Shown piece after piece: positions 1 to 4,776 of a stretch of 64,000 nucleotides of DNA. Every line of letters begins with the position of its first letter. The first letter of the stretch is position 1. The stretch is taken from positions 1-64,000 of IMG/VR virus record IMGVR_UViG_3300046665_000548; one strand, 5' to 3'. Below the pieces are notes generated by a model. The model was not told the origin of the DNA. It ran no database searches and saw only the letters and a program-made list of their open reading frames with translations. Position numbers and translations under genes: made by a program.

Positions 1-23
1 GCGAAAGCTGATATATTCACCCC

Positions 24-164
24 ATGTACTTGTAGCTGCACCTCGCCCCTTTCATTGGTCTCGCTTCTGCGGGCGACCAGCTATATACGTATAACGCTCG
101 TGATCGGTTAATTCCGACGCGGGCGTTTTTTGTTTTTCATCGTACTATTGGAGATTGTAAATGA
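24..164 (+). other. Candidate amber-containing leader ORF (M-Y-L-UAG; 46 codons if read through)
   Basis: ATG TAC TTG TAG CTG CAC at 24-41; frame stays open to TGA 162-164, overlapping ATG 161; TATATT at 12-17 lies 6 nt upstream. Confidence 0.45.
93..137 (+). terminator. Intrinsic terminator/attenuator hairpin
   Basis: AACGCTCG...CGGGCGTT stem followed by a T-rich tract. Confidence 0.65.
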
Positions 165-553
165 GTTGGCTTGCCACCCTACTGGGTAGCAAGGCGAAGA
201 GCCTTGTCGAGCGTCACGAAGACGCTGAAGAATTTGAACAAGAAGATTTGGACGTTTGGGATTCCACCGACGATTACGGCTATGCGGATGACGAGATTAT
301 CGGCACCGAGGAGTGGGAAGATCAGAAAGGAATGGAAGACCTCAAGCGTTCTCTCAAGCTCAATGCCAAGTGGTTTCTGGTGAAGGTCGTTAATTTCAAT
401 TCAGGCACATTGGCCGAACAGATTGAATGGCTCACGGAAAACTGTGGAGGTCAGTACAAGCGTGTTGGATGGTCATCGGGCTGTTCAACGAAGGTCGGAA
501 TCGCGTTCGAGCGGCCGAACGATGCGTTCTTCTACAAGCTTCGGTGGCGTTAA
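161..553 (+). CDS. Hypothetical protein, FKLRW-ended paralog family
   Basis: GGAG SD; ends FERPNDAFFYKLRWR. Confidence 0.8.
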   Translation: MSWLATLLGSKAKSLVERHEDAEEFEQEDLDVWDSTDDYGYADDEIIGTEEWEDQKGMEDLKRSLKLNAKWFLVKVVNFNSGTLAEQIEWLTENCGGQYKRVGWSSGCSTKVGIAFERPNDAFFYKLRWR

Positions 554-828
554 TGGCAACCCAGATTTTCAAACCACAAAGTATGCGCATTCGCCCGTTC
601 ATGAGAAGGCATCTGCCGTCCATGTGGGGCGTGTCCAGGATATGCAGATTTCATCACAAGGTAAACCTGCGTACCGAGCATATAACCCAGGCTATGAAAG
701 AATGGATTGAAGAGCAGCCGGGATTCTATTATCGCAGTGAAGGCAACAAGGTTTTCTACTTTTCAGAACCTTCAGTTGCCTTGTTGTTCAAGATGCGTTT
801 CTTTGGAGATACTGATGAAAATCCCTGA
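553..828 (+). CDS. Hypothetical protein, FKLRW-ended paralog family
   Basis: ATG overlaps previous TAA; FSEPSVALLFKMRFFG. Confidence 0.75.
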   Translation: MATQIFKPQSMRIRPFMRRHLPSMWGVSRICRFHHKVNLRTEHITQAMKEWIEEQPGFYYRSEGNKVFYFSEPSVALLFKMRFFGDTDENP

Positions 829-1135
829 CGAGTGGAACGAGCACCCAGCGTTCGGTGAAGCTCAGATGGTTCTCGGGCCACTGGATATTCCGGCCGCTGA
901 GGAGATCGAAGGCTTTGATTACGGTGAAGACGATTTTCTATTGTTCCGCTGGAATAATAACGCAGTAACGATGATGTTCGAAGGCAATATGGTTGTGTCG
1001 ATATCCTATAGACACAAAGCTGCGGATGGTTCAATCACACGTTATGGAGCAGATTTCTTCATCACTGATCCTGTCCCACAAGTATTTTTTGAGAATATCA
1101 AAAAATCTACACTAACAGGCTTGACGAACAAGTAG
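815..1135 (+). CDS. Hypothetical protein
   Basis: GGAG SD before ATG 815; ends in TAG. Confidence 0.7.
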   Translation: MKIPDEWNEHPAFGEAQMVLGPLDIPAAEEIEGFDYGEDDFLLFRWNNNAVTMMFEGNMVVSISYRHKAADGSITRYGADFFITDPVPQVFFENIKKSTLTGLTNK

Positions 1136-1149
1136 AACCTCGCTAGCTT
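1121..1149 (+). promoter_or_regulatory. Sigma70-type promoter of the Pth2 operon
   Basis: TTGACG-N17-TAGCTT. Confidence 0.65.
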
Positions 1150-1193
1150 AACAATACACGAAGACAGTAACCAACTAAACCAAGGATATTCCA

Positions 1194-1625
1194 ATGTCGC
1201 TGTAGCTGCACCATCACATTGATCTAACGGCTCTCACCACTGAGGCCGAGAACGACCCCTATCGCTTGTACGCCATTGTGCGCGGCGATCTGGAAATGTC
1301 GCCGGGCAAGCTCGCGGCTCAAGCCGGACATGCCTATTGCGACGCGCTCCATGCAGCGCTCACTCGCGATCCCTCTATCCAACAGAAGTATTTCAGGGCG
1401 AATAGCTCGGGGACCAAGGTCACCCTAGTCGCGTCCTCCGAGTTCCGACTCCTTCGCGCATATCAAGACGCGCAGAAGGCCGGATTGCCGTGCGCTCTGA
1501 TCATCGATCAGCATCACGTGCACCCTCCACACTTCGACGGCTCACCCATCATCACGGCGCTCGGGATCGGTCCTGCGCGGCGAGCGGATGTGCACGCCAT
1601 CACGAAGCGGTTCTCCACTCTTTAA
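1194..1625 (+). CDS. pth2: Peptidyl-tRNA hydrolase, Pth2 family, with in-frame UAG at codon 4
   Basis: YAIVRGDLEMSPGKLAAQAGHA, KVTL and TALGIGP motifs; SD AAGGA precedes ATG 1194, in frame with ORF 1266-1625 through TAG 1203-1205. Confidence 0.85.
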
Positions 1626-1651
1626 CCCCTGAAAAACCAAAGGATAAGATC

Positions 1652-1930
1652 ATGACCAACGAAAAGACCTACACGTTCAAGTTCACCACCCGTGAAACCT
1701 ACCTCTCCTATCGCGCCGATTGGAAGGCCGGTTACGCCGATCTCGCAAAAGAGATCAGCGACCTCAAGCGCATCCGCGCAAAGGGCACTCAGTCAGAGAT
1801 GTCCGCCGCTCAGAGCAAGCTCCACTATCTGTCGATCAACGCGACGGAGATGCTGGCCGCACTCAAGGAAGCCAAGCTGGAGGCAGGCCGTCAGTGGGCT
1901 GCTTCCCGTGAAGATCGTGTGGCCGCGTAA
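1652..1930 (+). CDS. Helical hypothetical protein (paralog of N-terminus of 2268-2840)
   Basis: AAGGA SD; FTTRETYLSYRADWKAGYADLAKEI. Confidence 0.8.
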   Translation: MTNEKTYTFKFTTRETYLSYRADWKAGYADLAKEISDLKRIRAKGTQSEMSAAQSKLHYLSINATEMLAALKEAKLEAGRQWAASREDRVAA

Positions 1931-1943
1931 GCGGTCACCCTTC

Positions 1944-2020
1944 GTAGGGGTAGCTGAATGGTTCAAGCACCGGTCCGGAAGGAACGGAGTATGTAGGTTC
2001 GAATCCTACCCCCTACGCCA
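1944..2020 (+). ncRNA. tRNA-like RNA lacking a canonical anticodon loop
   Basis: Acceptor GTAGGGG/CCCCTAC-G-CCA; T arm GTAGG-TTCGAAT-CCTAC; anticodon arm CCGGTCC-GGAA-GGAACGG with no U33. Confidence 0.8.
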
Positions 2021-2040
2021 CATTTTTTTTGGAGGAATAC

Positions 2041-2256
2041 ATGGCCGTCAAATATCTCGATAGCTTCACAGTTTACCCCACGGGTTCTGACGAGAAGATC
2101 AAGTTTGATTCGCTTCACGAAGCACAAGCATACGTCGAGCGGATCGTAGGAAATAGATCGTTCGCGAAACCTTTCCCGAACGAAAAAACCTATCTGTACG
2201 GACCCGGTAACGGCGACACTACACATATGATCCGCCAAGACTGCACATTCATTTAA
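2041..2256 (+). CDS. Hypothetical protein
   Basis: GGAGGA SD before ATG 2041. Confidence 0.75.
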   Translation: MAVKYLDSFTVYPTGSDEKIKFDSLHEAQAYVERIVGNRSFAKPFPNEKTYLYGPGNGDTTHMIRQDCTFI

Positions 2257-2267
2257 GGAGATCGATT

Positions 2268-2840
2268 ATGAGCGCGATGGGAATGCACCCGAAATTCACC
2301 GACAAAGAAGGCTATACCAACTGGATGGCCTCTTGGAAATCCATGTACAAGCAACTTTCTAGCGAGATCACCAAAGACAAGCTTTTCCTGAAGAAAGCTT
2401 TCCGAGAATCGTCTGTCGTTTCCGAAGAGACCAGGAAGCGTCAGAGCAATCTCGTACATAAGCGCGTAATGGCGCACAAGATGATGACCATGCACAAGGA
2501 TGCAAAGGAACGCTGGAAGCGTATCGTCGGCATGCAGAAAGAGATCGATGATCAGATGGCAAGCTTCCCGCTGACGCTGGAGGCCCCGAGCATCGATTTC
2601 CATTTCAACAAGGGCAGCATCGAATTCCCGTTTCTCCCTTCGTGGATCATTAAGTGTAAGGGCAAGACGTTCTACATGAACCATGTCGATTTTGATTGCG
2701 TTGGAACGACTCGCGAGACGCCTGAGCATCCGTCCACCAAAGGTTCGATGCGTTTCCGGCAGTGTTCGCTCGAACTGAGGGCAGATGGATCAGCATCGAT
2801 CAAAAAGAGGCAGCCAGTCGAATTGGCGAAAGTCGCTTGA
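2268..2840 (+). CDS. Two-domain hypothetical protein
   Basis: AAGGAG SD; N-terminus resembles 1652-1930; C-terminal FHFNK...W...RETPEHPSTKGS beta domain. Confidence 0.8.
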   Translation: MSAMGMHPKFTDKEGYTNWMASWKSMYKQLSSEITKDKLFLKKAFRESSVVSEETRKRQSNLVHKRVMAHKMMTMHKDAKERWKRIVGMQKEIDDQMASFPLTLEAPSIDFHFNKGSIEFPFLPSWIIKCKGKTFYMNHVDFDCVGTTRETPEHPSTKGSMRFRQCSLELRADGSASIKKRQPVELAKVA

Positions 2841-2864
2841 CAAAAATCGAATCTGTGTTAGTTT
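2837..2864 (+). promoter_or_regulatory. Sigma70-type promoter
   Basis: TTGACA-N16-TAGTTT. Confidence 0.6.
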
Positions 2865-2882
2865 TGAGGCTCCACGGAGGTC

Positions 2883-3878
2883 TTGAACATGTCGATCCAC
2901 CCCGGCGTAGAACTCGGTACCTATACTGAAGAACTGCGCCGGGTCCCCGTTCACCTGGATCACAAGCCTCATTTGACTTTCGATCTCGCCAAGGCTCTTG
3001 GGCCACAGGCAGTTGCCGAAGCCTCCGAATATTCAGGCGAGACGCTGATCGACCGGGTTCGTAACCTGGGGATGGAAGATTTCGCGAACCTGACGGTCGA
3101 TCAACTCGCCAAGGTTCGTCGCGCCTCGTTCATCATGATGGGTTCCTCTGTAGAGGATGCATTTCGGAACGAGCCGCGTCTTCGCATCATCCAAAAGATT
3201 GAAAACAGCATGTGGCGATGGGGCGTCTCCCGCTCCGGCTGGAATGAGGTCGTTGATGCCTATGATGGCATTCGTCGCTTCACTTTTCATCCCGACTTTG
3301 AGGTCCGGCTCGATCACACCACTGGTCACAACGAGCGCGGCCATAGCCAGTATAGCCGTACGTTTCTCGACGGCGTGTTCGGCTTCCTGATCTATTATCG
3401 AGGCGAGCATGTGATGACGCTCGGCTTTTCGGTCATGAGCAAGCGCCGTCTGCTGATCCAGCAGGTGCAATTGAAGAAGCGTCGCGGAAATCGATGGTTG
3501 TTTAAGCTGTCGAGCAATTACGTGGAGTTCGCTCTTTCTCGCTTCCAGGAAAGCTTTCCGCGTCATCGCCTCTACCTGATCGACGGCGAAGACAACATTC
3601 GTACGAGTCTCAACTCGTATAGTTCTGGTTTGAAGGATGCGGAAAGCCAATTGGAACGCGCGACCGCATCCCTCAAGAAGGCTGCGGGCCAGGACCGAAC
3701 GTACGATTTACGTTCGATTAATCGCGCACTCGATGACAAGCTTTTCTTCAAGGAAAAGATTGAACACGTTCGTGAACAAGTTGGCCGCGTGACTGCGATC
3801 TACGCCAACACTGGCCGATATACTCGCGGCAAGACGTTGGTCGTCAATCGCCTAAAGCATTACGCGCTGGCGGCTTGA
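2883..3878 (+). CDS. Hypothetical protein
   Basis: 331-aa ORF with GGAGG SD (start may be ATG 2889). Confidence 0.8.
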   Translation: MNMSIHPGVELGTYTEELRRVPVHLDHKPHLTFDLAKALGPQAVAEASEYSGETLIDRVRNLGMEDFANLTVDQLAKVRRASFIMMGSSVEDAFRNEPRLRIIQKIENSMWRWGVSRSGWNEVVDAYDGIRRFTFHPDFEVRLDHTTGHNERGHSQYSRTFLDGVFGFLIYYRGEHVMTLGFSVMSKRRLLIQQVQLKKRRGNRWLFKLSSNYVEFALSRFQESFPRHRLYLIDGEDNIRTSLNSYSSGLKDAESQLERATASLKKAAGQDRTYDLRSINRALDDKLFFKEKIEHVREQVGRVTAIYANTGRYTRGKTLVVNRLKHYALAA

Positions 3879-3909
3879 CAGACGGCGCATTCAAGTAGAT
3901 TGATCTTGA

Positions 3910-4080
3910 ATGAAGATTTACATTCTCACCGCGCATAAGGCTGATCCGAATGGCGGCGAGGGCACTACAGAGGTTATGAATTTCGGCTGGACCGATAAGG
4001 CAATAGCGGAAGCCTATAAGGACCAGCATGAAGTCTATTATGACACTCAATTTGAGGTACACGAAATCGATGTGATATAG
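3910..4080 (+). CDS. Small hypothetical protein (56 aa, absent from ORF track)
   Basis: MKIYILTAHKADPNGGEG...FEVHEIDVI, TAG stop; TTGACA at 3875. Confidence 0.65.
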   Translation: MKIYILTAHKADPNGGEGTTEVMNFGWTDKAIAEAYKDQHEVYYDTQFEVHEIDVI

Positions 4081-4090
4081 AACGTCTCTT

Positions 4091-4178
4091 GGGGATGTAG
4101 CTCAGCGGTAGAGCGCCGGTCTCTAAAACCGGGGCGGCCAAAAGCCCGGCGCGGGTTCGAAGCCCGCCATTCCCACCA
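4091..4178 (+). tRNA. Amber suppressor tRNA (anticodon CUA), long variable arm, G4:U69, A73
   Basis: GGGGATG/CATTCCC-A-CCA; anticodon arm CCGGT-CTCTAAA-ACCGG; T arm GCGGG-TTCGAAG-CCCGC. Confidence 0.9.
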
Positions 4179-4179
4179 A

Positions 4180-4256
4180 GCTCCCTTAGCTCAGTTGGTT
4201 AGAGCACTGGACTCTAAATCCGGGGGTCGTCGGTTCGAGCCCGACAGGGAGCGCCA
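4180..4256 (+). tRNA. Amber suppressor tRNA (anticodon CUA), short variable arm, G73
   Basis: GCTCCCT/AGGGAGC-G-CCA; anticodon arm CTGGA-CTCTAAA-TCCGG; T arm GTCGG-TTCGAGC-CCGAC. Confidence 0.9.
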
Positions 4257-4260
4257 GTTA

Positions 4261-4292
4261 GAAAGCCGGGGGAAACCCCGGCTTTCTTTTTC
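4261..4292 (+). terminator. Intrinsic terminator after tRNA pair
   Basis: GAAAGCCGGGG-GAAA-CCCCGGCTTTC plus T tract. Confidence 0.85.
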
Positions 4293-4296
4293 TTCT

Positions 4297-4776
4297 TTAC
4301 ATTACTTCCGCGACGACGCGGCCGACACCACGACCGGTCAGACCGATAGCGCTGGCTGCGCCCTTGGACAGGTCGAGCACGCGACCTTTGATGAATGGGC
4401 CGCGATCATTGACCGTGACGACGACGCTGCGGTCACCGTGGGTGACACGTAGCTTGGTGCCGAACGGCAGCGAACGGTGCGCAGCGGTCATGGCGTTCTG
4501 ATTGAAGCGAGCGCCCGAAGCGGTCTTGTTACCGGCTTCATTGCCGTAATAGGACGCGACGCCAGAAAAGGTGCGTCCGCTTCCAGTCGTCACGGGCGCG
4601 GCGGTTGCGCGAAACGCGTGGTCGAAAAACGACAGGATGGATGGAGTGGTATCTGGCGTCGGCTTGGCGACGCGCTGAGCATGATGCCGATGATGGTGAG
4701 ATTTGGCCGAGGCTGTATCAGCAATCGTGCCGGTCATTAGAAGAGCGAGAGTAGCAACAGTGATAATGGGTTTCAC
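4297..4776 (-). CDS. rlpA: RlpA-family (DPBB) lytic transglycosylase with signal peptide
   Basis: GVASYYG, TASG, TAAHRSLPFGT, VNDRGPF, LDLSKGAA; GTG 4776 after AAGGA. Confidence 0.9.
   Translation of the reverse strand: MKPIITVATLALLMTGTIADTASAKSHHHRHHAQRVAKPTPDTTPSILSFFDHAFRATAAPVTTGSGRTFSGVASYYGNEAGNKTASGARFNQNAMTAAHRSLPFGTKLRVTHGDRSVVVTVNDRGPFIKGRVLDLSKGAASAIGLTGRGVGRVVAEVM

What the first reader, a model, noticed from the sequence alone, without database searches (positions are those of the whole stretch)
12..164. Amber-containing leader that would read through a terminator into the next gene
TATATT(12-17) is followed 6 nt later by ATG TAC TTG TAG, consistent with a leaderless start. If UAG is decoded, the frame runs without stops through a hairpin (56-79) and the terminator (93-137). 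It ends at TGA 162-164 in an ATGA overlap with gene 161. It shares TGTAGCTGCACC, in the same frame, with the pth2 start. Inference: an attenuator that senses amber suppression.
Basis: partly seen in the sequence, partly recalled or inferred. Interest (0 to 1): 0.75.

Follow-up and report, generated by a model that had tools for sequence, protein, structure and literature searches.

The report
Amber-gated leader in a huge phage
A 607-kb phage puts an amber stop codon at the fourth codon of a short leader and of its peptidyl-tRNA hydrolase gene, so these genes probably switch on only when the phage's own amber-suppressor tRNAs are working; the same trick, with matching stop codon and tRNA, recurs in dozens of huge phages and gives their 'orphan' suppressor tRNAs a target.

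Summary
Window 12-160 is the spacer between kptA (stop at 9-11) and an unknown gene (161-553) at the start of a circular 607,744-bp phage genome.

**The leader.** It has a promoter-like site, ATG + 2 codons + TAG, a structured domain, an intrinsic terminator, and a frame open to an ATGA overlap with gene 161.
- It recurs in 8 sequences from about 5 lineages, including the cultured Sinorhizobium phage Phosso.
- ATG and TAG are invariant while neighbouring bases differ.
- The read-through frame is open in all 8. Counting one sequence per lineage, it is open in 5 of 5, against 1 of 10 for the other two frames.

**pth2.** It starts the same way (ATG TCG CTG TAG).
- In 75 of 82 distinct phage Pth2 loci the first in-frame stop before the domain is an early TAG; in 5 it is TGA.
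- Linked suppressor tRNAs match: 43 TAG with CUA, 3 TGA with UCA, and no mismatches.
- Atu_ph07 pairs a TGA gate with its published tRNA-UCA.

**Reading.** The window carries two tRNA-CUA genes at 4091-4256. The best reading is a suppression-dependent gate: a ribosome must pass UAG to defeat the terminator and couple into gene 161. No transcript or protein data exist. I rate it a new variant of a known kind.

The parts
1..11 (+). 3' end of kptA/Tpt1 (RNA 2'-phosphotransferase); stop TGA at 9-11
   Evidence: The contig ends overlap by 146 nt, so the upstream sequence is the genome end. The ORF L002 951-1511 hits PF01885 at 1e-50.
9..17 (+). Promoter-like extended -10 (TGa TATATT). Its -35 (TTGCAC) lies 16 nt upstream, outside the window (genome 607588-607593).
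   Evidence: TTGCnn, 16-17 nt, TAnnn(T/A), then 6-9 nt to the ATG, in all 5 loci checked. It is below the threshold of the consensus scan. Inferred, with no TSS data.
24..35 (+). Gate: ATG TAC TTG TAG, with the amber as codon 4 at 33-35. No Shine-Dalgarno sequence, so probably a leaderless start.
   Evidence: ATG followed by 2 to 7 codons and then TAG is conserved in 8 leaders, while the codons in between vary.
24..164 (+). Read-through frame of 46 codons ending at TGA 162-164 (ATGA overlap with gene 161)
   Evidence: The frame is open in 8 of 8 leaders. Counting one sequence per lineage, it is open in 5 of 5, and the other two frames are open in 1 of 10. The peptide is not conserved: 4 synonymous against 13 non-synonymous changed codons versus L119.
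31..85 (+). 5' structured domain. UGUAGCUG (31-38) pairs with CAGCUAUA (78-85) and encloses the hairpin at about 57-78.
   Evidence: Minimum-free-energy folds. In L119, L121 and L125 the mini-ORF strand likewise pairs with the strand just 5' of the terminator, using different sequences.
94..138 (+). Intrinsic terminator: stem 94-126 with a one-base bulge, U-run 127-138
   Evidence: Across 4 sequences 100% of cells are paired and 2 pairs show compensatory changes.
150..553 (+). Shine-Dalgarno GGAG (150-153) and gene 161-553: 130 aa, unknown function, small alpha/beta C-terminal domain
   Evidence: no family hit. Homologues found. AF2 model pLDDT 66, with no significant fold match.
1121..1149 (+). 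Promoter-like site of pth2: TTGACG, 17 nt, TAGCTT
   Evidence: Both hexamers are identical in L119 while the spacer differs. Inferred.
1194..1625 (+). pth2 (peptidyl-tRNA hydrolase, PTH2 family), starting at ATG 1194 after Shine-Dalgarno AAGGA (1182-1186), with an amber at codon 4 (1203-1205)
   Evidence: PF01981 at 1.7e-21; the match begins upstream of TTG 1266. TTG 1266 corresponds to CTC in L119, and L119's TTG corresponds to CTA here, so only the ATG is a shared start. The stretch from TAG to the domain shows 7 synonymous against 4 non-synonymous changed codons.
4091..4256 (+). Two amber-suppressor tRNA genes (anticodon CUA): 4091-4178 with a long variable arm, and 4180-4256
   Evidence: ARAGORN. 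Rfam tRNA scores of 64 and 69 bits. Both are conserved in L119 with compensatory changes in the acceptor stem.
4260..4297 (+). Strong intrinsic terminator that closes the plus-strand gene block 161-4256

Best explanation
Window 12-160 is a regulatory leader. Its control codon is an amber stop that only the phage's own suppressor tRNAs can read.

**Proposed mechanism**
1. A sigma-70-like promoter with an extended -10 starts the transcript at or next to AUG 24, giving a leaderless message.
2. A ribosome makes Met-Tyr-Leu and meets UAG at codon 4.
3. If release factor 1 wins, the ribosome leaves. The 5' domain (31-85) and the terminator (94-138) fold, and transcription stops before gene 161.
4. 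If tRNA-CUA (genes at 4091-4256) decodes UAG, the ribosome keeps translating a frame that is kept free of stops. It unzips the 5' domain, and the freed strand can pair with the terminator's 5' arm. The ribosome then runs into the terminator itself, so RNA polymerase reads on.
5. The ribosome ends at the ATGA overlap and can couple into gene 161.

pth2, 1 kb downstream, carries the same start module (ATG TCG CLG-equivalent: ATG TCG CTG TAG), here inside the coding frame, so Pth2 protein also requires suppression. The device therefore reports the balance of suppressor decoding against termination at UAG.

**Shown in silico**
- The anatomy of the leader.
- Its conservation in other phages.
- That pth2 needs read-through.
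- That the gate codon and the suppressor anticodon match across phages.

**Inferred**
- The transcription start.
- That termination or anti-termination actually happens.
- The amino acid inserted at UAG.
- The biological purpose of the gate.
For: **The leader**
- The anatomy is as described.
- The same leader stands before gene-161 homologues in L119, L121, L122/L123, L125, L249, L250 and the cultured phage Phosso. ATG and TAG are invariant. The mini-ORF has 3, 4 or 8 sense codons.
- No Shine-Dalgarno sequence was seen in the leaders inspected. The promoter-like hexamers were checked in five loci.
- The read-through frame is open in 8 of 8. It ends in an ATGA or TAATG overlap with the gene in 4, fuses in frame in 3, and ends 4 codons inside the gene in 1.
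- Taking one sequence per lineage, 5 of 5 leader frames are open against 1 of 10 other frames. My own Fisher calculation gives about 0.002.
- The terminator helix is fully paired, with two compensatory pairs.
- With the first 45 nt masked as if by a ribosome past the gate, and the fold limited to the RNA made before the terminator's 3' arm, the 3' strand of the upstream domain pairs with the terminator's 5' arm in WIN, L119, L121 and L122 (not in L249). With the ribosome absent or at the gate, that pairing does not form.
- In Phosso the segment after the gate pairs with the Shine-Dalgarno sequence and start of the gene (z = -4.06). That is a different block with the same logic.

**pth2**
- The only start codon shared by the window and L119 is the ATG before the TAG.
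- The 20 codons between TAG and the domain evolve as coding sequence: 7 synonymous against 4 non-synonymous changed codons.
- Of 82 distinct Pth2 loci, 75 have TAG, 5 TGA and 2 TAA as the first upstream in-frame stop. Most have an ATG 1-7 codons before it (usually after a Shine-Dalgarno-like motif) and no start after it.

**Codon and anticodon match**
- 43 TAG loci hold tRNA-CUA, 3 TGA loci hold tRNA-UCA, and there are no mismatches.
- Atu_ph07 has a TGA gate and a published tRNA-UCA (PMC6102473).
- Phosso has a TAG gate and two tRNA-CUA genes.
- The window's suppressor tRNAs are conserved with compensatory changes.
Against: - There is no transcript, 3'-end or protein evidence. No RNA run was listed.
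- The promoter is weak by consensus (3 of 6 in the -35) and is not called by the scan.
- An open frame of this length is individually likely in GC-rich sequence (P 0.29-0.67), and several leaders are related to each other.
- In full-length folds the terminator wins thermodynamically unless its own 5' arm is masked. Any antiterminator would therefore have to act kinetically.
- The leader peptide is not conserved. That is expected for this model, but it also fits non-coding RNA.
- L122 shows no pairing of the mini-ORF with the pre-terminator strand.
- In three lineages the leader is in frame with the gene, so read-through would add an N-terminal extension, which the model does not need.
- Phosso has no clear terminator.
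- Five Pth2 loci have ATG directly after TAG, and two TGA-gated loci have GTG directly after TGA. In those loci, re-initiation could replace suppression.
Confidence: 0.6

Rival explanations
1. The mini-ORF is a true three-codon ORF that ends at UAG, and nothing reads through in the leader. Its translation alone would matter. It could act as a lambda bar-like minigene that yields short peptidyl-tRNA, which is a Pth substrate. Alternatively it could be a ribosome-loading or stand-by site that holds the 5' domain open.
For: - The ORF is 3 codons long in most leaders.
- It lies beside a peptidyl-tRNA hydrolase gene.
- The peptide after TAG is not conserved.
- Each open frame is individually unremarkable.
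Against: - The frame after TAG is open in 8 of 8 leaders. Per lineage it is open in 5 of 5, against 1 of 10 for the other frames.
- It ends at or overlapping the start of the gene.
- The same module in pth2 must be read through.
- Matching suppressor tRNAs are present.
- Mini-ORF length varies (3, 4 or 8 sense codons) and there is no Shine-Dalgarno sequence, unlike bar minigenes.
Confidence: 0.15
2. The leader is an untranslated RNA element. It could be a 5' stem-loop that stabilises the message, a protein operator on the near-palindrome TGTAGCTGCA, or a T-box-like leader in which UAG pairs directly with the CUA anticodon of the suppressor tRNA.
For: - The region is strongly structured (z = -3.77; Phosso z = -4.06).
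- The 5' end pairs with the pre-terminator strand in four leaders.
- UGGU, which could pair with an ACCA tRNA end, is present at 56-59.
Against: - ATG and TAG are invariant at a fixed distance from the -10, while both strands of the helix differ between lineages. A helix alone would not hold them fixed.
- The palindrome is absent from the other lineages.
- UGGU is UCGU in the closest relative.
- No Rfam family, T-box included, matches at E up to 1.
Confidence: 0.1
3. The leader has no function of its own. It would be a decayed copy of the 5' end of pth2, left in front of gene 161 when the operon was rearranged, lying in an ordinary spacer that also holds the kptA terminator.
For: - In L124, L127, L126 and L120 the gene-161 homologue lies directly downstream in the same gene block, after pth2 in L124 and L127, with no leader of its own.
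- The leader and the pth2 start share 19 of 24 bases in the window.
Against: - A remnant would not keep ATG, TAG, a promoter-like site and an open frame across lineages whose gene-161 proteins are only 37-55% identical.
- The upstream gene differs between lineages, so the hairpin is not simply the kptA terminator.
Confidence: 0.1

Closest known systems
pyrBI and trp/his leader-peptide transcription attenuators of enteric bacteria (from established knowledge)
   Same: - A promoter-proximal short ORF is followed by an intrinsic terminator in front of the structural gene.
- The position of the leader ribosome decides whether the terminator forms.
- As in pyrBI, the leader ORF runs through the terminator.
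- As in trp, the rate-limiting codon reports the supply of one tRNA.
   Different: - The control codon is a stop codon read by a virus-encoded suppressor tRNA in competition with a release factor, not a run of sense codons.
- The start looks leaderless.
- The ORF ends in an overlap with the next gene, or fuses with it.
- Nothing has been shown experimentally.
Stop-codon recoding in phages with suppressor tRNAs (code-15-like; bioRxiv 10.1101/2021.08.26.457843; PMC9523058)
   Same: A phage-encoded tRNA-CUA makes expression of phage genes depend on suppression in a standard-code host, and this has been proposed to act as a timing device.
   Different: - Here TAG still ends about 19% of the long ORFs.
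- Internal TAGs could not be confirmed.
- There is no genome-wide excess of ATG-N6-TAG.
- The stop sits at codons 2-16, mostly 3, 4 or 8, of a few specific genes next to the tRNA gene. It is a gate rather than a code change.
bldA tRNA-Leu(UAA) and TTA-codon control in Streptomyces (from established knowledge; compare PMC10732093)
   Same: A single dedicated tRNA gates a small set of genes that carry its codon.
   Different: The gated codon there is a rare sense codon and the system is cellular. Here it is a stop codon in a virus, so the release factor competes with the tRNA.
prfB (RF2) autoregulation through an early in-frame UGA (from established knowledge)
   Same: An early in-frame stop in a translation-factor gene makes its expression depend on how efficiently that stop is terminated.
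   Different: - prfB escapes by a +1 frameshift at a slippery site with an internal Shine-Dalgarno sequence. Here the frame is unchanged and a cognate suppressor tRNA is supplied.
- Pth2 is not the factor that reads the stop.
Lambda bar minigenes (from established knowledge)
   Same: A very short ORF whose product is a short peptidyl-tRNA, functionally tied to peptidyl-tRNA hydrolase.
   Different: - bar minigenes have a Shine-Dalgarno sequence, two codons and a real stop.
- Here the frame after the stop is conserved open, and in pth2 it encodes the enzyme.

Membership tests
Leader-peptide transcription attenuator | Short ORF that starts close to a promoter, upstream of the regulated gene | tested here: met
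   ATG at 24 lies 6 nt after a -10-like hexamer. The arrangement is conserved in 5 loci and the ORF is present in 8 leaders. The promoter itself is inferred (searches do not call it).
Leader-peptide transcription attenuator | Intrinsic terminator between the leader start and the structural gene | tested here: met
   Stem 94-126 plus a U-run; covariation. Phosso lacks a clear terminator and has a helix that sequesters the Shine-Dalgarno sequence instead.
Leader-peptide transcription attenuator | Control codon(s) whose decoding depends on the sensed tRNA | tested here: met
   TAG is invariant at codon 4, 5 or 9 of the leader. Cognate tRNA-CUA genes lie in the same genomes.
Leader-peptide transcription attenuator | Ribosome position changes terminator formation, through an antiterminator or by overlapping the terminator | tested here: inconclusive
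   The frame crosses the terminator in the window and its relatives. A predicted pairing of the domain's 3' strand with the terminator's 5' arm appears only when 45 nt are masked. In full-length folds the terminator is always favoured.
Leader-peptide transcription attenuator | Regulated termination observed on RNA | not testable with these tools
   No RNA run was listed.
Genome-wide stop-codon recoding (code 15-like phage) | Phage-encoded suppressor tRNA | tested here: met
   Two tRNA-CUA genes.
Genome-wide stop-codon recoding (code 15-like phage) | Many genes, typically late ones, with internal in-frame recoded stops | tested here: inconclusive
   A coding-like extension follows 16% of TAG-ended ORFs, against about 8% for TAA and TGA. 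The two window cases are separate genes, and five other candidates had no Pfam hit. TAG ends 146 of 781 long ORFs.
T-box riboswitch | Match to the T-box model; conserved specifier loop and a UGGN bulge that pairs with the tRNA 3' end | tested here: not met
   No Rfam hit other than tRNAs at E up to 1. UGGU at 56-59 is not conserved in L119.
Lambda bar-type minigene | Shine-Dalgarno sequence plus a 2-3 codon ORF ended by a real stop | tested here: not met
   No Shine-Dalgarno sequence precedes the leader ATG. The frame after the stop is conserved open. Toxicity was not testable.
PTH2 peptidyl-tRNA hydrolase (the gene at 1194-1625) | Full-length match to PF01981 above the gathering score | tested here: met
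   77 bits against a cut-off of 23; profile positions 1-114 of 115 matched.

The most novel reading that the evidence does not exclude
In a wide clade of huge phages the suppressor tRNA would be mainly a dedicated regulator, not a tool for changing the genetic code. It would form a private codon-anticodon pair (UAG with CUA, or UGA with UCA) with an early stop placed in pth2 and a few neighbouring genes, or in leaders in front of them. This circuit would measure suppressor decoding against release-factor activity. In the window it may feed back positively, because the tRNA genes lie downstream in the same plus-strand block. It would explain why cultured jumbo phages that carry suppressor tRNAs have no known targets.
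Probability: 0.45. Interest if true: 0.85.

Novelty: new variant of a known kind. Interest (0 to 1): 0.8.

Why it matters
- **Targets for orphan suppressor tRNAs.** Jumbo-phage papers report suppressor tRNAs whose targets were not found or not narrowed down. The XacN1 authors found none, and the Atu_ph07 authors only noted many UGA stops (PMC5852040, PMC6102473). This work gives concrete targets with co-varying codon and anticodon.
- **Annotation errors.** Pth2 is annotated from an ATG inside its domain in Atu_ph07 and Phosso.
- **A new kind of control codon.** The leader would be an attenuator whose control codon is a stop codon.
- **Testability.** Phosso infects the non-pathogenic Sinorhizobium meliloti and carries both the pth2 gate and a leader, so the idea can be tested at the bench.
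- **Synthetic biology.** The device is also a compact, natural design for expression switches that depend on a suppressor tRNA.

Tried and rejected
- **Motif as a repeated promoter or operator.** Rejected. The 12-mer has only two relevant copies in 607 kb. A scan of viral contigs for the 16-base pattern returned 112 scattered single hits, which I judge to be about chance level.
- **Close relatives through gene 161, pth2 or kptA as single proteins in viral contigs.** This found nothing, or only unrelated AT-rich phages. Relatives were found through the protein database and its contigs and through profile-based scans.
- **Genome-wide code change.** The crude ORF-coverage test was uninformative. 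The TAG-extension excess is modest. Pfam could not confirm internal TAGs. There is no excess of ATG-N6-TAG followed by an open frame, nor of Shine-Dalgarno + ATG + early TAG apart from pth2.
- **A thermodynamic antiterminator in the full leader.** Not found.
- **Automatic alignment of the leaders.** MAFFT mis-aligned the ATG and TAG, so the comparisons were anchored by hand.
- **Function of gene 161.** No Pfam or PHROG family, and no significant fold match.
- **RNA evidence.** None was listed.
- **XacN1 pth.** It has no gate, so that phage's suppressor targets remain unknown.
- **Identity of the amino acid inserted at UAG.** It could not be derived. tRNA 4091-4178 has a Trp-like anticodon arm plus a long variable arm, and tRNA 4180-4256 resembles the phage's Phe and Lys tRNAs but has G73.

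Full report
**Where the window lies.** The window is the first 64 kb of a 607,744-bp virus record. Its ends overlap by 146 nt at 99% identity, so the genome can be read as a circle and the sequence before window position 1 is the genome end (locus L002). GC content is 51.7%. The genome carries 57 tRNA genes and a tmRNA. The only suppressor tRNAs are two with anticodon CUA at window 4091-4178 and 4180-4256.

**The observation.**
- TATATT lies at 12-17, followed by six bases.
- ATG TAC TTG TAG occupies 24-35.
- The frame then has no further stop until TGA 162-164, which overlaps ATG 161.
- An inner hairpin lies at about 57-78.
- A long hairpin at 94-126 is followed by UUUUUUGUUUUU. Region 12-165 folds at z = -3.77.
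- TGTAGCTGCACC occurs at 31-42 and 1201-1212, each seven bases after an ATG in the same frame.

Taken alone these features are not beyond chance. The 12-mer search is not significant within the window. An open 42-codon frame has P of about 0.38. The third genomic copy of the 12-mer is an unrelated Val-Ala-Ala-Pro stretch in a repeat.

**Context.**
- The upstream gene is kptA/Tpt1 (PF01885, 1e-50) and ends at TGA 9-11. Window 12-160 is therefore a spacer, not a gene tail.
- Downstream lie gene 161-553 (130 aa, no family), two small ORFs, and then pth2 (PF01981, 1.7e-21).
- These are followed by further small genes, a tRNA-like gene, the two tRNA-CUA genes and a strong terminator at 4260-4287. 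All are on the plus strand.

**pth2 needs read-through.**
- The Pfam match begins two codons before TTG 1266, the first conventional start. That TTG has no Shine-Dalgarno sequence, whereas ATG 1194 has AAGGA upstream.
- The closest relative is L119, a 124-kb metagenome contig whose gene-161 protein is 88% identical. It has the same 23 bases, ATGTCGCTGTAGCTGCACCATCA.
- The window's TTG 1266 corresponds to CTC in L119, and L119's own TTG corresponds to CTA in the window. The ATG before the TAG is therefore the only shared start.
- The 20 codons between TAG and the domain differ at 11 codons, 7 of them synonymous. This is the pattern of the domain itself, which has 24 synonymous against 4 non-synonymous changed codons. 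That stretch is translated, so the amber must be decoded.

**The gate is a family-wide feature.** Profile scans gave about 100 Pth2 loci from viral and metagenome contigs, many of them from contigs of 200-540 kb.
- Among 82 distinct loci, the first in-frame stop upstream of the domain is TAG in 75, TGA in 5 and TAA in 2.
- Most have an ATG 1-7 codons before the stop, usually after a Shine-Dalgarno-like motif. The gate is most often codon 3, 4 or 8, and there is usually no start codon after it.
- Suppressor tRNAs within the fetched flanks match without exception: 43 TAG loci with tRNA-CUA, 3 TGA loci with tRNA-UCA, and none crossed. My own calculation gives 1 in 15,180 if the lineages were independent, which they are not fully.
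- In many loci the tRNA-CUA gene lies only 18-175 nt before the gate.

Cultured phages agree:
- Agrobacterium phage Atu_ph07 has ATG, five codons and TGA in frame with the domain. Its only suppressor tRNA is UCA (PMC6102473).
- Sinorhizobium phage Phosso has ATG AAG TAT TAG and two tRNA-CUA genes.
- Both records annotate the gene from an ATG inside the domain.
- XacN1, whose authors could not find targets for its two tRNA-CUA genes (PMC5852040), has a more distant pth without a gate.

I found no paper that describes this arrangement.

**The leader is conserved.** Gene-161 homologues with an upstream spacer all show the same plan. They are L119, L121, L122 (identical to L123), L125, L249, L250 and Phosso.
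- **Start.** A promoter-like pair of hexamers is followed by a pyrimidine-rich 6-9 nt without a Shine-Dalgarno sequence and then ATG. In the five loci checked systematically the pattern is TTGCnn, 16-17 nt, TAnnn(T/A). L249, L250 and Phosso were read by eye.
- **Gate.** Two sense codons follow the ATG (three in L250, seven in Phosso), then TAG.
- **Frame.** The frame then has no stop up to the gene.
- **Variation.** The codons between ATG and TAG differ (TAC TTG, TTC CTG, ACG TAT, ACC TAT, ACC TTG). The near-palindrome is absent outside the window's lineage.
- **End of the frame.** It ends in an ATGA overlap in the window, L125 and Phosso, and in a TAATG overlap in L119. It continues in frame into the gene in L121, L122 and L249, and ends four codons inside the gene in L250.
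- **Statistics.** Taking one sequence per lineage, 5 of 5 leader frames are open against 1 of 10 for the other two frames. My own Fisher calculation gives about 0.002. A first-order Markov model is weaker, with a product of about 0.014 over six sequences, some of them related.
- **Peptide.** It is not conserved: 4 synonymous against 13 non-synonymous changed codons, like the other frames. If the leader is translated, what matters is the act of translation, not the product.

**Structure.**
- The terminator helix is kept, with 100% pairing and two compensatory pairs in four sequences.
- In the window, L119, L121 and L125 the mini-ORF strand pairs with the strand just before the terminator, using different sequences.
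- In full-length folds the terminator forms unless its own 5' arm is masked.
- I also folded only the RNA made before the 3' arm exists, with 45 nt masked as if by a ribosome past the gate. The freed 3' strand of the upstream domain then pairs with the terminator's 5' arm in four of five leaders. It does not when the ribosome is absent or sits at the gate.
- In Phosso the segment after the gate pairs with the Shine-Dalgarno sequence and start codon of the gene (z = -4.06). The block there looks translational.
- No Rfam family matches the leader.

**Mechanism proposed.**
1. The transcript starts at or next to AUG 24.
2. A ribosome reaches UAG at codon 4.
3. If release factor 1 acts, the ribosome leaves, the structures fold, and either transcription stops at 138 or the gene start stays masked.
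4. If the phage tRNA-CUA decodes UAG, the ribosome continues. It opens the domain, prevents the terminator from forming, and ends at the ATGA overlap, where it can couple into gene 161.

pth2 uses the same gate inside its own coding frame. The steps from the transcription start onward are inferred. Because the tRNA-CUA genes lie downstream in the same plus-strand block, with no strong terminator between 138 and 4260, positive feedback is possible. However, pth2 has its own promoter-like site, and there may be another at 3874, so this is speculative.

Why Pth2 is gated is unknown. One possibility is that placing the stop early wastes nothing when suppression is off and makes expression track the ratio of suppressor to release-factor activity.

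**How far the genetic code is changed.** TAG ends 146 of 781 long ORFs. TAG-ended ORFs more often continue as coding-like sequence (16% against about 8%). The cases I tested were separate genes or had no family hit. I see a handful of gates, not a code change.

A few other genes beside pth2 carry the same early amber in other phages: one family in L139 and L173, another in L187 and L201.

**Rivals.** I considered four alternatives:
- a true three-codon minigene;
- an untranslated structure, operator or T-box-like element;
- a decayed copy of the pth2 start with no function;
- re-initiation in place of suppression.

The first three do not explain the invariant ATG and TAG together with the open frame and the matching tRNAs. 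Re-initiation may apply in the few Pth2 loci where ATG or GTG directly follows the gate.

**Verdict.** It is a new variant of known kinds, namely leader-peptide attenuation and suppressor-tRNA-dependent phage gene expression. Interest is high, because it supplies targets for orphan suppressor tRNAs and can be tested in cultured phages.

Noticed in passing
window 1944-2020 (L119 7482-7557): A tRNA-like gene with an over-long anticodon loop. ARAGORN calls a 4-base anticodon (ggaa) here and tRNA-Pro (agg) in the relative. The anticodon arm is identical in both.
   Followed up: partly
window 127 and 138, against genome 607725 and 607736: The 146-nt terminal overlap differs at two bases, both in the U-run of the leader terminator (T against G, C against A). 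This may be assembly noise at the contig end or a population variant.
   Followed up: no
window 1-11 and L002 951-1511: kptA runs 11 codons longer here than in the close relative L119, where a TAA stands at the corresponding place.
   Followed up: no
L236 (Atu_ph07 MF403008 198552-198884) and L237 (Phosso PV764938 176653-176985): The Pth2 homologues of two cultured jumbo phages are annotated from an ATG inside the PTH2 domain, and Atu_ph07's is labelled hypothetical. The conserved N-terminal part lies behind an in-frame TGA or TAG.
   Followed up: yes
L139 6531, L173 5373, L187 5796, L201 6173: Two further gene families beside pth2 start with a Shine-Dalgarno sequence, ATG, 1-2 codons and TAG. 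One is about 190 aa and the other 110 aa, and neither has a Pfam hit or a copy in this genome. In L139 the two gates share TAG ATT GAT AA.
   Followed up: partly
75 TAG gates in Pth2 loci: The base after the gate is G in 44, A in 26, C in 4 and T in 1. The residue before it is most often Leu, Thr or Ser. The lineages are not independent.
   Followed up: partly
window 2268-2837: This 190-aa protein is 38% identical to Atu_ph07 AUZ95033, the second gene after pth2 there. A metallophosphatase follows in several relatives. Together these suggest a conserved RNA-repair or translation module around pth2.
   Followed up: partly
G000 about 267.0-267.4 kb, minus strand: Repeated coding-like units carry an in-frame TGA at the same position of each unit (F*PMLVG). 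It may be the wrong strand of a repeat protein.
   Followed up: no
G000 576377-576796: A permuted tmRNA gene (tag ANDNVAVSEYALAA), in addition to 57 tRNA genes.
   Followed up: no
window 3874-3905: TTGACA, 15 nt, TAGATT before gene 3910 and the two tRNA-CUA genes. This is a possible separate promoter for the suppressors (read by eye).
   Followed up: no
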